45,395 nucleotides of DNA from Kudoa neothunni (Eukaryota; Animalia; Cnidaria). This document shows, one piece after another, positions 32,389-36,261 of the stretch. Below the pieces are notes generated by a model that saw only the letters and a program-made list of their open reading frames with translations, had not been told where the DNA came from and did not search any database. A program made the position numbers and the translations under genes. Positions within the stretch are counted from its first letter, which is position 1; each line of letters opens with the position of its first letter. Location of the stretch: positions 17,099,322 to 17,144,716 of the forward strand of contig OZ199838.1 of assembly GCA_964304625.1 (NCBI GenBank). Direction: 5' to 3'.

Positions 32389-33524
32389 CAGTTGCGACTC
32401 GAGTATGGAACTATGGAACTGCAGCACCCCCGGGCACCTTAATATTCATATAATCCTATTCAACTAAGTGTGAATCCGTTAGTATCTACGCGTAAATAAT
32501 TATTCCTTGATAGGTTGAATTTATTAAAATAACTTTTGCAATATTCGTGGGACAAAAAATTATTGTATATCCTACAAACTACAAAACACGATTTTGCATT
32601 TATTATAATAAGACTTATAGGATTACATTATTTGATTTTTAAATGTAATAAGGACAATTAATATTTCTCCACATAAATCCTTGAATCATTACAAATTTTA
32701 ATTTGGATGTTTCATAATAGTATTGAAATACACATATGCCGTGGCAAGTGGAAAGTCTTTATGTTTCTAAATATTTTCTCCTACCCCAATCGCTATACTT
32801 TGTCATAAACATTGTATATCTTCATTATGATAGAGGGCGGATAATGAAAAACTATTTTATATAAAGCCACAAAATTATAAAAATAATCTGTATATCATTC
32901 AACCTAATTAATGTATACACCTTTTTAGGGCGGAGAAAAGATAATTACGATGTTTTTATTAGGTAAATACATCTATACTCTGGAACAGGTAATTCTATGT
33001 TATCTTGATTCATTTTAAGTATACTCCAATTTAAAAGCGTGTTAATAATTCAAAAAAACATCGAAGCGCGAGGCTGAATCATTATTGCTTATGTATTGAC
33101 ACAATGAATATAAGGAGTTCTTTCATTTTAATTATCTGTATAAACATTTAAATTTCATAACTATTACGTTTAATGTTAATAAACCTTTCACTCTACATGA
33201 AAATGCGAAAAATACTTGAAAGTAACTGTTGTACCATAAAGTTCCGGCAAAGGGGAATTTTATCGCAGTACGTGTGCGTATGACATAGAGCCACGTAGAT
33301 ACAATCTACTATACGATTCACACTGTCAGCTGATTTGTGTTGTGTTTTAATCTATAACACGTCGGTTCATATCCTTGTTTTATTGTTATTGCTAAAATTT
33401 CAATTGGTTTAAAAGTAAATGATTATTCCTTCTCCAGGAATTTATTCAATTTTGAACAACGTTTACAAGAATCGTCTAATGCATTGCAGCACCACCCATT
33501 AGTTTAAACTACAAGCCGCCATTG
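32389..33524. mobile_element. Old hAT-type MITE (~1.1 kb, non-coding)
   Basis: Ends cagttgcgactcg / caagccgccattg (degenerate CAGTGGCG TIR); 8-bp TSD ttggttaa/ttggttac; subterminal tgcagcacc motif near both ends. Confidence 0.65.
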
Positions 33525-33538
33525 TTGGTTACGTTTAA

Positions 33539-34051
33539 TGTAACACAAGTTCCGAACCAAGATTCGAACCTGGGTCATTTTCATTAAGAGCCGATGGTGC
33601 CATACCGCACTGCTCTCGATTGCCCATCTATTATGGTGGATTACAACCCTTATAATCCGCGTGTTACATTCCCCGGGCGCTGATGAAGCCTAGCGCTTGT
33701 AACTGAGGAAGGAGATTCGTAGGGAATCTAAGGATATACCGGAGATGTCAGGCGAAATTCTTGCCGAATGACGAAGGCTGGTTGGTTGTCGAGCCTGACG
33801 CGACGCGGTTGCCTTATGAATCTATTTCTGATGACTTATGTCTGATAAGGAAAGAAAGAATTCTTCTGCTAAGAGGAAAGGAGGCTAGTGTTACTAACAA
33901 CCCCTGTCACCAAATGTGACACAAGGTCCGAACTGGAATCGAACCTGGGTTATTTGCATTAAAAATAAGACAGTGGTACCATACCGCACTGCTCTCCATC
34001 GTGCATCCATATGGTCGGCCGGATTACAGCCCTTATAACCCACATGTTACA
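33539..34051 (-). mobile_element. TRIM (miniature non-autonomous LTR retrotransposon) with tRNA-like LTRs
   Basis: Direct repeats 33539-33668 and 33915-34051, both TGT...ACA. On the - strand, PBS TTTGGTGACAGGGG follows the 5' LTR and PPT GGGGAA precedes the 3' LTR. Flanks tttaa/tttga. LTRs contain B box GGTTCGA(A/T)TC. Confidence 0.85.
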
Positions 34052-36261
34052 TTTGATAATGTGTATAAGGTGAAAAGCTAACTTCAACCAATCATCACAA
34101 TGACGTAATCAGTTGTTAATCTTATTGCTGAACCCATGTGATCCGCTTAACAAACTTTAAATCGACAAAATCATTATTTTCCAAATACCTTTTTAACATT
34201 TGGCGGTGTAAAAATAATTTTAAGATTTTTGAAATATGTGATTTTTAAAAAATTTCATAAATGATTTTCTATAAGAAAATATTGTTGTTAAACATGCGTG
34301 CTTATTGACACACATGGACAACATAGATTTATATCGATAGTAGATTTCTGTAGATAATTATTACGTATAGCCACGATATGGGAACGGAGGTATTACAATA
34401 ATGAGATTCCCGGAGAAAATTTTATTTTATTAAAAAAAATGTACAATATAAACCGTTGATTATTTGATTGAAAACTCCTGCTGACATACAGAAATTATTG
34501 CGAGAGTAATACTCTAAGGTAATTCGTTGAGGTATGAATCACGCGATAAATGTACACAACTACAACACAAGAATAAGACTAGTTTTTATGTACGCGTATC
34601 AGCGCTTAACTGCTCATAGCAAATACCATAATTGCTTCAGAAATTATATGGATTTATAAATTTCCCAATCATAAATCAGAGTAAGTTTTTCCTCACCTAA
34701 AGTAGTTGATACTGACAAGGTAACCCTGTCTTTTCTAGCTTGTTAACGAACATCTTTTTCATTTTTTAAACAAAAGAATGAAGGTGTTTCGATTGTAAAA
34801 AAAAAATAGCCTTTCGCCGGAATTAAAAATATTTTCATCCTTATAATTTGTTTATGTTGTAATGGTTTTTTCAATCATTAAAATTTCGACGGCCTTAGCT
34901 TCTCCGTGAAACCCTTTACATTGGAGTCCTGACTTGTCTTCTAATCGCAAAACAAATATCAGTTTGCAGTAAAATTATTTAATACTCCTTCTGTGACCTG
35001 GGAAACTTTTCTATAATGACATGATCAAGGACTTATTTTCCTAAACGTATAAATTTGGAAGCCTGATCATACATTTGGGCACCAAAAAATTAAAATTTTC
35101 CAGATAAAGCCCTTTTTTTTATTACAAACCACAATTCTTCAATTCGGTTCGTTTTTATACATAGGATCCAAAAGCAAATAAACATTAAATTCTTATAAAC
35201 ACATACGAATAAAACTAGACAGCGGAGGGTAAATTTTTGTATTGTTTGTGATTTCTCCCCTGTTAATTTATTAATGAATATACAGAGAAACTATTATCGT
35301 ACATTTTTTATCAATACTGAACTGTTTTGTGGTCATTCTGAAACCTCTCTCTATCCTGTCATTAATCATAAAAGTCCCCCTATGTGAAGTGATTTCGTTA
35401 TAGGAGAGCGTTGTTAGGGTTTAAAATTTTTAAAAATGTACCACGTAGTTATTCTTGTAAATAAAATAAATTTGAATTCGAACATAAATAATGATAAAAT
35501 TAATAATAATTACGTTTGTATTACAACCACGCTATAGTAAGTCATAATACATCCACGTCTTTTTGTCTATGTATCTATGCATTTATATTTATTAATTATT
35601 CATACAATAAGAATTGTTGATAGAAATCTGTGATGAATTCGCGGATTATATGATGAAGTGAGACTATTTTCATTGAGTGGATCTATCTCAATATAAATCC
35701 CATTATTACGTAATTATGGATTATTTCATTAAAACGTTAATTGATTATTTACTCATGTGCAGGTAGAACAGAAATGGTGACGAATTTTCTATTATAATGC
35801 ATTTATTATTAAGCGTGTGAAATTAATTACCTAAAAACCACGATTTTCATAAATTGAACACACAAGTTAATTCATTCGTAATTCCGTATCTAATCACAAA
35901 ATATTTATTCGTCACCGATTTCAAAGAAAAATAACGTTAAAAGTAAATTTGAATTTCATAAAAAATAAATAAGCAAACAAACAAAAATTAAATATCGGTA
36001 GCAAGATACACATATATACGTAATAGAATACATATTATTAATCACAATTGAAAATCATTAATTATATCTACTATTTAACATGTTTAGTATTTGTATAAAA
36101 GAATAAATTGGAATTACTTCAATAGATTCCAATTATAAATAAAACTTGAATAGGTTGAATGAAGTTCTTCGTGTATATAATTCCGATACCATAATAACTT
36201 AATATACGAATTTAACAAACTGGTAAGTAAGGGCCAGAGGACATAGACAAAATTTTGAACC

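What the first reader, a model, noticed from the sequence alone, without database searches (positions are those of the whole stretch)
33539..34051. Miniature LTR retroelement whose LTRs are tRNA-like Pol III cassettes (SINE/LTR hybrid)
Seen: a 513-bp element with 130/137-bp LTRs and a 246-bp non-coding interior. On the - strand each LTR reads like a tRNA: gagagcagtgcggtatgg (A-box/D-arm-like), ggctcttaatg in the left LTR (Lys-anticodon-loop-like), then ccaGGTTCGA(A/T)TC (B box). A PBS (TGGTGACAG) and PPT lie on the same strand. The interior and the left LTR have no TTTT on that strand despite the AT-rich genome, consistent with Pol III read-through; the right LTR has one T5. Established: Cassandra TRIMs carry 5S-derived LTRs. 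From memory, tRNA-LTR TRIMs have been reported as Helenus, with 4-bp TSDs in animals, whereas this copy suggests 5 bp. Inference: a Pol III-transcribed, trans-mobilised family, probably undescribed in this lineage.
Basis: partly seen in the sequence, partly recalled or inferred. Interest (0 to 1): 0.8.

Follow-up and report, generated by a model that had tools for sequence, protein, structure and literature searches.

The report
Decayed mini LTR retrotransposon with tRNA patch
This is a real but long-dead 513-bp miniature LTR retrotransposon of the published "Helenus" type, which borrows the machinery of a resident Gypsy element and carries a worn piece of a tRNA in its repeats; whether that piece still drives RNA polymerase III is unproven.

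Summary
The structure is as described. Two direct repeats of 130 and 137 bp (about 77-80% alike) flank a 246-bp non-coding interior.

It is a true LTR element, read on the minus strand:
- TG..CA ends and a 4/5 five-bp target duplication around the pair.
- A TT spacer, then a 13-nt primer site exactly complementary to the 3' end of the host tRNA-Leu(AAG).
- A G-rich tract before the 3' LTR.

The ~130-bp unit is a genome-wide family with at least 91 candidates. All 29 other copies examined are solo, and most carry their own 5-bp duplications. A resident Ty3/Gypsy family has 128-bp LTRs, similar LTR tips, the same TT spacer, the same primer site and 5-bp duplications. It is the likely helper.

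Only one interior relic exists elsewhere, so this window holds the only full-length copy in 40 Mb.

The tRNA claim holds in part. A 17-24-nt match to the variable loop plus T arm (B box) of host tRNA-His is far above chance. The "A box" and "Lys anticodon loop" are not. ARAGORN, Rfam and a host-tRNA model find no tRNA.

The youngest subfamily spread after losing half the T arm, so Pol III transcription is unproven.

It is a new member of a known kind (Helenus/TRIMp3). The scan already met this family elsewhere in this genome.

The parts
33534..33538 (.). Left copy of the 5-bp target-site duplication (TTTAA)
   Evidence: It matches TTTGA at 34052-34056 in 4/5 positions. The inner flanks of the two repeats match their own outer flanks in only 2/5 and 1/5, so the pair went in as one unit.
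33539..33668 (-). 3' LTR of the element (element sense is the minus strand), 130 bp, TG..CA ends
   Evidence: It belongs to a family with at least 91 candidates in the genome. Its closest relative among the sampled copies is L002 (85%), not its partner LTR (77%).
33555..33578 (-). tRNA-derived patch in the 3' LTR: variable loop plus T arm (B box GGTTCGAATC)
   Evidence: 22/24 identical to positions 42-66 of host tRNA-His(GTG). z = 7.7 against shuffles. T-arm hit of 10.9 bits with the host-tRNA covariance model.
33600..33617 (-).
   Evidence: Present and about 90% conserved in the family, at tRNA-like distance from the B box (about 45 nt). Not more similar to host tRNA 5' parts than shuffles are. 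Lacks T8 and C11 of the canonical box.
33669..33677 (-). Polypurine tract (CCCGGGGAA on the minus strand) abutting the 3' LTR
   Evidence: The Gypsy helper candidate has GGGGGGAGGTG at the same place. The relic copy L086 has GGAGGAA.
33669..33914 (-). Non-coding interior, 246 bp, 48% G+C in a roughly 30% G+C genome
   Evidence: No ORF of 60 aa or more and no Rfam family. BLAST finds no other copy in the genome. Its last ~118-129 bp recur at about 75% identity in one relic, G000:C2:3736907. No similarity to the Gypsy interior.
33900..33912 (-). Primer-binding site TGGTGACAGGGGT
   Evidence: Exact complement of the last 10 nt of host tRNA-Leu(AAG) plus CCA (L078:1501-1582). Other LTR elements of the genome use the same 12-mer.
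33913..33914 (-). TT spacer between the 5' LTR and the PBS
   Evidence: Of 17 exact ACA-NN-PBS junctions in the genome, only this element and the three copies of one Gypsy family have TT. The rest have TC (11) or AA (2).
33915..34051 (-). 5' LTR, 137 bp, more decayed (several indels, T5 at 33961-33965)
33936..33954 (-). tRNA-derived patch (variable loop plus T arm) in the 5' LTR
   Evidence: 18/19 identical to host tRNA-His positions 42-61. z = 6.3. A full-length alignment to the host-tRNA model gives only 11 bits, E = 0.31.
33979..33996 (-). A-box-like motif in the 5' LTR
   Evidence: Same string as in the 3' LTR. Not above chance.
34052..34056 (.). Right copy of the target-site duplication (TTTGA)

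Best explanation
The 513-bp stretch is an old, inactive, full-length copy of a non-autonomous miniature LTR retrotransposon (a TRIM). It reads on the minus strand as: 5' LTR, TT spacer, PBS, 246-bp non-coding interior, PPT, 3' LTR.

Shown:
- The element's structure and its 5-bp target duplication.
- A family of at least 91 candidate LTR units. All 29 other copies examined are solo, and most have their own 5-bp duplications.
- A primer site exactly complementary to host tRNA-Leu(AAG).
- A resident Ty3/Gypsy family with gag and PR-RT-RNaseH-IN. It has 128-bp LTRs with similar tips, the same TT spacer, the same PBS and 5-bp duplications.
- A tRNA-derived segment in each LTR, in element sense: variable loop plus T arm (B box), closest to host tRNA-His.

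Inferred:
- An RNA running from the 5' LTR to the 3' LTR is packaged by the Gypsy proteins.
- tRNA-Leu(AAG) primes minus-strand synthesis and the G-rich tract primes the plus strand.
- The Gypsy integrase recognises the shared TGTAACA...GTTACA tips and makes the 5-bp duplication.
- LTR-LTR recombination then reduced nearly all copies to solo LTRs.

Which polymerase made the RNA is open. I put about 40% on Pol III acting from the tRNA-derived box B with the weak box-A-like motif, as proposed for Helenus. I put about 40% on Pol II. The element fits the published Helenus/TRIMp3 type and is not a new class.
For: - Repeats and coordinates.
- Family and solo state.
- Sharp ends and 5-bp TSDs of the solo copies.
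- Outer 4/5 TSD against non-matching inner flanks.
- PBS matching tRNA-Leu(AAG).
- 17 junctions against 0 in the control, and the TT spacer shared only with one Gypsy family.
- Gypsy domains PR, RVT_1, RNase H and rve, plus a gag zinc knuckle.
- Gypsy LTRs of 128 bp, 99% identical.
- Gypsy TSDs CTTGG, GGGGG and TAGAT.
- Aligned LTR tips.
- Second relic with interior 3' part, PPT and LTR.
- tRNA-His T-arm match, z 4-10 on the sense strand only.
- A 1156-bp contig from a public run spans the whole element.
- Definition of Helenus, and Gypsy as helper of animal Helenus: PMC10886601.
Against: - There is only one full-length copy and one relic. No second LTR-PBS junction of this family exists in 40 Mb.
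- The two LTRs are less alike (77-80%) than each is to some solo copies. This fits old age but gives no positive support.
- The interior shows no similarity to the Gypsy interior, so the helper is assigned from the tips, spacer, PBS and TSD length only.
- Against the Pol III part: no tRNA is called by ARAGORN, Rfam or the host-tRNA model beyond the T arm.
- The A-box region is not above chance.
- 17 of 28 copies have a T4, and 3 more a T5, between the boxes.
- The youngest subfamily spread with a truncated T arm.
- A conserved TATAAG sits near the LTR start.
Confidence: 0.8

Rival explanations
1. It is an ordinary Pol II-driven TRIM. The tRNA-like patch is a fossil passenger, for example a captured tRNA 3' part or an old SINE or tRNA insertion in the LTR, and is not the promoter. 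Transcription starts downstream of the conserved TATAAG near the LTR 5' end.
For: - The A-box region is not above chance.
- There is no tRNA call in any tested copy.
- Most copies have a T4 between the putative boxes.
- The youngest subfamily has 91.5% pairwise identity, and 6 of its 7 members carry perfect TSDs of their own (one is 4/5). It lacks the 3' half of the T arm yet inserted at least 7 times.
- TATAAG at LTR positions 15-20 is more than 90% conserved.
Against: - The patch lies in element sense, is about 88-90% conserved, and keeps tRNA-like spacing between the AGC..GG motif and GGTTCGA.
- The deletion variant still reads GGTTCGGACC, a degenerate B box.
- Helenus and Cassandra set a precedent (PMC10886601).
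- There is no clear poly(A) signal in the LTR.
Confidence: 0.4
2. Two unrelated solo-LTR insertions happen to lie 246 bp apart in the same orientation around ordinary host DNA. There is no composite element.
For: - The two repeats are only 77% identical, and each is closer to some other copy.
- The interior looked unique by BLAST.
- All 29 other sampled copies are solo.
Against: - A 13-nt exact tRNA-Leu(AAG) PBS sits 2 nt from one repeat, with the same TT spacer as the Gypsy family.
- A G-rich PPT abuts the other repeat.
- The outer flanks match 4/5, while the inner flanks match 2/5 and 1/5.
- A second locus holds the interior 3' part, PPT and LTR in the same arrangement.
Confidence: 0.03
3. 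The ~130-bp unit is a tRNA-derived SINE or a MITE with short terminal inverted repeats, not an LTR.
For: - The short size, the 7-bp terminal inverted repeat TGTAACA/TGTTACA, the tRNA-like patch and the many solitary copies.
Against: - It has no A-rich or LINE-like tail, and it has a fixed 5-bp TSD rather than the variable TSDs of SINEs.
- Its TG..CA tips, size and tip sequences match the LTRs of a resident Gypsy element.
- The full-length copy carries a PBS and a PPT.
Confidence: 0.02

Closest known systems
Helenus (TRIMp3; Kojima 2024, Biology 13:119, PMC10886601)
   Same: - A short non-coding element with two LTRs, a PBS and a PPT.
- LTRs that carry a tRNA-like sequence in element sense.
- Its 513 bp fall in the published 311-1263 bp range.
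- Many solo LTRs with TSDs, and some families with few or no full-length copies.
- Animal Helenus share their PBS with Gypsy elements, and tRNA-Leu is among the primers used.
   Different: - The TSD is 5 bp, as in fungal and plant Helenus. Animal Helenus make 4 bp.
- The TRGCY part of box A is not met (it reads GAGCA).
- Only the T arm is demonstrably tRNA-derived.
- The host phylum is not among the six animal phyla listed, if the genome is a myxozoan as earlier scan notes say.
- The LTR tips resemble those of the candidate helper, which the paper did not see for its families.
Cassandra (5S-rRNA-bearing TRIM of plants) and Ajax (5S, nemerteans)
   Same: Each is a TRIM with a small-RNA-gene-derived promoter region in both LTRs. 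Ajax makes 5-bp TSDs and uses a tRNA-Leu primer.
   Different: Their insert derives from 5S rRNA, not tRNA. Pol III transcripts have been shown experimentally only for Cassandra (as cited).
Classical TRIMs / SMARTs (Pol II type, 'TRIMp2')
   Same: Size, structure, lack of coding capacity, dependence on an autonomous LTR element, and dominance of solo LTRs.
   Different: These have no small-RNA-derived patch in the LTR.
tRNA-derived SINEs (SINE2)
   Same: A tRNA-derived B box inside a short interspersed repeat.
   Different: SINEs have no LTRs, PBS or PPT, are mobilised by LINEs, have variable TSDs and carry a 3' tail. None of these features applies here.
Resident Ty3/Gypsy family with 128-bp LTRs (L082:4155-8490; L080; L075/L081)
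   Same: LTR length, the TGTAACA..GGATTA..TAATCC start, the CTTG.(T/C)GTTACA end, the TT spacer, the PBS TGGTGACAGGGG, a G-rich PPT and a 5-bp TSD.
   Different: It is autonomous (gag plus PR-RT-RH-IN), about 4.3 kb long and young (LTRs 99% identical). The centre of its LTR has no tRNA-like patch, and its interior is unrelated.

Membership tests
TRIM (terminal-repeat retrotransposon in miniature) | Two short direct LTRs with TG..CA ends flanking a short non-coding interior | tested here: met
   LTRs of 130 and 137 bp, a 246-bp interior and no ORF of 60 aa or more.
TRIM (terminal-repeat retrotransposon in miniature) | PBS complementary to a host tRNA next to the 5' LTR, and a PPT next to the 3' LTR | tested here: met
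   A 13-nt exact complement of host tRNA-Leu(AAG)+CCA lies 2 nt after the LTR. CCCGGGGAA abuts the 3' LTR.
TRIM (terminal-repeat retrotransposon in miniature) | Target-site duplication of fixed length; multi-copy family including solo LTRs | tested here: met
   5 bp. Nine solo copies are perfect in the automatic count, one more by eye, and five are 4/5. The element itself is 4/5. At least 91 candidates.
Helenus (TRIM with tRNA-derived LTR sequence) | The LTR contains a sequence derived from a tRNA | tested here: met
   A 17-24-nt match to the variable loop plus T arm of host tRNA-His, sense strand only, z 4-10. This covers only the 3' third of a tRNA.
Helenus (TRIM with tRNA-derived LTR sequence) | Box B (GGTTC) conserved | tested here: met
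   GGTTCGAATCC or a close variant is present in most copies. The 13-bp-deletion subfamily keeps only GGTTCGGACC.
Helenus (TRIM with tRNA-derived LTR sequence) | Box A with TRGCY and YGG (true of most, not all, Helenus) | tested here: inconclusive
   The motif reads GAGCAGTGCGG. YGG is present but TRGCY is not. The spacing to box B is tRNA-like. The region is not above shuffles and gets no CM support.
Helenus (TRIM with tRNA-derived LTR sequence) | Transcription by RNA polymerase III from the LTR | not testable with these tools
   Three RNA runs gave 0 reads on the stretch, so this was no test. Pol III use is also unproven for published Helenus.
Helenus, animal lineages | 4-bp TSD; PBS shared with Gypsy elements | tested here: not met
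   The TSD is 5 bp, so the first half fails. The PBS is shared with resident Gypsy elements, so the second half is met. This suggests an origin independent of the described animal lineages.
tRNA gene or pseudogene | Cloverleaf recognised by tRNA finders or covariance models | tested here: not met
   ARAGORN found 0 in the window and in 29 loci. Rfam tRNA gave no hit at E<=10. The host-tRNA model scored the T arm only, at 8-11 bits.
SINE2 / MITE | A 3' tail with variable TSDs (SINE), or transposase-type terminal repeats and TSD (MITE) | tested here: not met
   Fixed 5-bp TSD, no tail, and tips that match Gypsy LTRs.

The most novel reading that the evidence does not exclude
This would be an independent, myxozoan origin of a Pol III-type TRIM, built from the integrase-recognition tips of a resident short-LTR Gypsy element plus a tRNA-His-derived promoter half. 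The weak T4 inside the tRNA-like part would act as a leaky terminator that sets the R boundary. It would also be the first TRIMp3 for which the helper can be named from shared LTR tips, spacer and primer site.
Probability: 0.2. Interest if true: 0.55.

Novelty: new member of a known kind. Interest (0 to 1): 0.35.

Why it matters
- It extends Helenus-type elements (TRIMs with tRNA-derived LTRs) to a lineage not listed in the founding paper. Earlier scan notes, which I did not check, place the genome in a myxozoan cnidarian.
- Unusually, it comes with a concrete helper candidate that shares LTR tips, spacer, primer tRNA and TSD length. The Helenus paper could not show which features tie a TRIMp3 to its autonomous partner, so this matters.
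- The window holds the only full-length copy. It therefore supplies the PBS and PPT that turn the genome's roughly 100 'tRNA-like 130-bp repeats' from a guess into a diagnosed LTR family.
- The practical use is annotation. These units should be masked as solo LTRs, not called as tRNA pseudogenes, SINEs or MITEs.
- The young subfamily that lost half the T arm is a natural test of whether the tRNA patch is needed at all.

Tried and rejected
- ARAGORN on the window and on 29 family loci found no tRNA.
- Rfam at E<=10 on the region and on 20 loci gave no tRNA hit, only chance snoRNA-like matches.
- A covariance model built from 29 host tRNAs, run with filters off, found the T arm only.
- Similarity of the 50 nt upstream of the T arm to tRNA 5' parts was not above shuffles.
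- The T-run argument is uninformative.
- BLAST of the interior against the genome found no other copy.
- A sequence-only model of the interior's 3' part found only the window and one relic.
- The LTR-end plus PBS pattern found no second junction of this family.
- The interior has no similarity to the Gypsy interior.
- Three metatranscriptome runs carrying the same species label gave 0 reads, so this was no test of expression.
- I could not name the organism independently, because ids are coded. I rely on unchecked earlier notes for 'myxozoan/Kudoa'.
The 13 further PBS-bearing junctions (TC and AA spacers) could not be inspected.
- One search printed a majority line of the 131-nt LTR as a by-product of the conservation count. 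I did not save it, search with it or use it further.
- Rejected: two independent insertions, SINE, and MITE (see rivals).

Full report
**1. The observation**

Direct repeats lie at 33539-33668 (130 bp) and 33915-34051 (137 bp). Between them is a 246-bp interior (33669-33914), for 513 bp in all.

The repeat finder recovers the pair in three blocks of 84-89% identity. BLAST over the full length gives 77% with indels, or 80% when gaps are ignored.

The interior and left repeat have no TTTT on that strand, and the right repeat has a T5. A 1156-bp contig from a public run spans the whole structure without a base difference, so it is not a local mis-join. That run may be the assembly's own source.

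**2. The 130-bp unit is a family of LTRs**

A search of the window's genome (40.3 Mb, 4 contigs) with the whole element returned 40 scored matches out of 91 candidates. All of them cover only the repeat unit. In the 29 other loci fetched there is a single unit within +-1.5 kb.

Aligned with flanks, the unit has sharp ends, TGTAACAC...CATGTTACA. Individual units carry their own 5-bp target duplications:
- Nine are perfect in an automatic count (ATTTG, GTTTC, CAAAG, AATAC, TCTTG, CTTAC, TTTAA, AGAAC, CTTTC).
- One more is perfect by eye (L011, TTTAT).
- Five match 4/5.
- A control offset matches about 1.5/5.

These features describe solo LTRs, not SINEs (no tail, fixed TSD) and not MITEs.

**3. 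The window copy is one full-length element, not two insertions**

Around the pair the outer flanks are TTTAA and TTTGA (4/5). Each repeat's inner flank matches its own outer flank in only 2/5 and 1/5 positions.

On the minus strand the right repeat is followed by TT and then TGGTGACAGGGGT. The left repeat is preceded by CCCGGGGAA.

A pattern search for a tRNA 3' end of that sequence found one exact gene, which ARAGORN calls tRNA-Leu(AAG). Its 3' end ...CCCACCCCTGTCA plus CCA is the exact complement of 13 nt of the primer site.

The junction ACA-NN-TGGTGACAGGGG occurs 17 times in the genome and 0 times for the reversed control. It is therefore a working primer site of this genome's LTR elements.

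A pattern for the PPT-LTR junction found a second locus (G000:C2:3736907). There, about 118 bp homologous to the interior's last ~129 bp (about 75% identity), a GGAGGAA tract and the LTR start follow each other in the same order. The LTR is then split by a roughly 490-bp insertion. The interior therefore belongs to the element.

A sequence-only model of that part finds only these two loci, and no other LTR-PBS junction of this family exists. The window holds the only full-length copy in the assembly.

**4. A helper candidate**

The LTR-end-plus-PBS pattern also hit other elements. One family has three copies, in L080, L082 and L075/L081. It is about 4.3 kb long and has:
- a gag ORF with a zinc knuckle
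- a 1109-aa pol with protease, RVT_1, RNase H and integrase, in Ty3/Gypsy order
- LTRs of only 128 bp, 99% identical in L082
- a PPT of GGGGGGAGGTG
- perfect 5-bp TSDs in all three copies: CTTGG, GGGGG and TAGAT

Its LTR begins TGTAACACGGATTAAC..GTTAATCC and ends CTTGGCGTTACA. The mini LTR begins TGTAACATGTGGATTA..TAATCC and ends CCTTGTGTTACA (alignment A2).

Of the 17 exact PBS junctions, only these three copies and the window element use the TT spacer. Eleven use TC and two use AA.

The centres of the LTRs and the interiors are unrelated. Trans-mobilisation by this Gypsy family or a close relative is an inference. It rests on the shared tips, spacer, primer and TSD length.

**5. How tRNA-like are the LTRs?**

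- ARAGORN finds nothing in the window or in 29 family loci.
- Rfam's tRNA model gives no hit at E<=10 in the region or in 20 loci.
- I built a covariance model from 29 host tRNAs and ran it with filters off over 28 loci. It scores only the T arm, at 8 bits in ten solo copies and 10.9 bits in the window's left LTR. There is one weak full-length alignment, to the window's right LTR (11 bits, E = 0.31).
- Local alignment of each copy to the host tRNAs, with dinucleotide shuffles as control, is clearly positive on the sense strand only (z 4-10). The best partner is almost always tRNA-His(GTG).
- The aligned part is 17-24 nt, the variable loop plus T arm. It is 19/19 in L002 and 22/24 in the window's left LTR.

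By eye, the AGC..GG motif, a CTTTTAA heptamer and GGTTCGA lie at about tRNA spacing, so an eroded whole tRNA is possible. Only the B-box third is demonstrated.

**6. Does it use Pol III?**

For Pol III:
- The patch is in element sense and about 88-90% conserved.
- Helenus and Cassandra set a precedent.

Against Pol III:
- The strict TRGCY of box A is absent.
- Of 28 copies, 17 have a T4 and 3 a T5 between the boxes.
- The youngest subfamily (seven sampled copies, 91.5% pairwise identity against 82% for the rest, each with its own TSD) shares a 13-bp deletion. The deletion turns GGTTCGAATCCCGGTTCGGACC into GGTTCGGACC, so the element kept spreading with half a T arm.
- A TATAAG near the LTR start is over 90% conserved.

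The lack of TTTT in the interior means nothing: 34% of shuffles lack it, and AAAA is absent too. Three RNA runs gave no reads at all, so expression was not tested. I put Pol III and Pol II at about 40% each.

**7. Comparison with what is known**

[quoted passage not shown] The paper reports:
- lengths of 311-1263 bp and many solo LTRs
- Gypsy-type PBS sharing and 4-bp TSDs in animals, against 5-bp TSDs in fungi and plants
- six animal phyla, with Cnidaria not among them
- no experimental proof of Pol III use

The present element meets the structural definition and the box-B criterion. It does not meet the strict box-A motif, and it differs from the animal lineages in TSD length.

A full-text search for 'TRIMp3' found no paper on such elements other than Kojima 2024. 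A search for Kudoa genome and transposable-element papers brought up only general genome papers, which I did not open.

Earlier notes of this scan call the genome a myxozoan (Kudoa). I could not check this because ids are coded.

The scan has met this family before on other DNA of the same genome. A follow-up report (s1-690121) judged it to be about 117 solo LTRs of Helenus type. My results agree and add the full-length copy, the primer tRNA and the helper candidate.

**8. Verdict**

This is a real, old, dead Helenus-like TRIM. The kind is already known. What is new is the lineage, the 5-bp TSD in an animal, and the helper named from shared LTR tips.

Interest is moderate to low (0.35). One functional step is referred.

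Noticed in passing
L082:4155-8490 (G000:C1:13462154-13466489); also L080:5062-9390 and L075/L081: A Ty3/Gypsy family of about 4.3 kb with unusually short 128-bp LTRs (99% identical in L082). It has a gag ORF with a zinc knuckle, a pol ORF of 1109 aa (PR-RT-RNaseH-IN), a tRNA-Leu(AAG) PBS and perfect 5-bp TSDs in all three copies. In L080 pol is split into two ORFs. I described it only and built nothing from it.
   Followed up: partly
G000:C2:5552025-5555921 (L083/L071 merged): A second LTR element of about 3.9 kb with 127-bp LTRs (93.7% identical), ends TGTTAC...GTAACA, a TC spacer and the same tRNA-Leu(AAG) PBS. Eleven junctions in the genome have this TC spacer and two have AA. One primer tRNA therefore serves several LTR lineages.
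   Followed up: partly
L007:1287-1784 and the equivalent stretches of L009, L012, L013, L017, L026 and L028: A repeat family of about 500 bp carries an embedded solo LTR with a 4/5 TSD (TACGA/TAGGA). One LTR insertion into another mobile element was then amplified with it. This fits an earlier first-reader note about an empty site in a sister MITE.
   Followed up: partly
L010, L011, L015, L020-L023 (LTR copies): This is the youngest LTR subfamily, with 91.5% pairwise identity. Six of the seven copies have perfect TSDs of their own and one (L023) is 4/5. All share a 13-bp deletion between two GGTTCG repeats that removes the 3' half of the T arm.
   Followed up: yes
L086:1380-1720 (G000:C2:3736907 region): A relic of a second element: the interior's 3' part, then GGAGGAA, then the LTR start. 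The LTR is then split by an insertion of about 490 bp, and no 5' half lies within 1.4 kb.
   Followed up: partly
window 34102-34306 and 33323-33460: Both flanks of the element are other repeats. Contig depth in run X1 rises to about 1750 at 34143-34183 and to 30-50 at 33323-33460, against about 6.7 in the unique interior. I did not classify these families.
   Followed up: no
LTR positions 11-31, sense strand (window 33638-33658 on the + strand); Gypsy LTR L082:4163-4181: Both the mini LTR and the Gypsy LTR start with a palindrome just after TGTAACA: GGATTA..TAATCC in the mini LTR and GGATTAAC..GTTAATCC in the Gypsy LTR. The stem is kept while the loop differs. It may be a shared recognition site.
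   Followed up: no
L019:919-980: A tRNA-like hit (15.4 bits, E 0.0085 with the host-tRNA model) with acceptor and T arms but a shortened middle, about 600 bp from a solo LTR. It may be one of the tRNA-half-carrying retrotransposon relics reported by earlier notes on this genome.
   Followed up: no
L078:1501-1582 (G000:C2:3778286-3778367, minus strand): The host tRNA-Leu(AAG) gene that matches the PBS. It is followed by a T4 terminator. The tRNA family search, which scored only 63 of 2556 candidates, missed it.
   Followed up: yes
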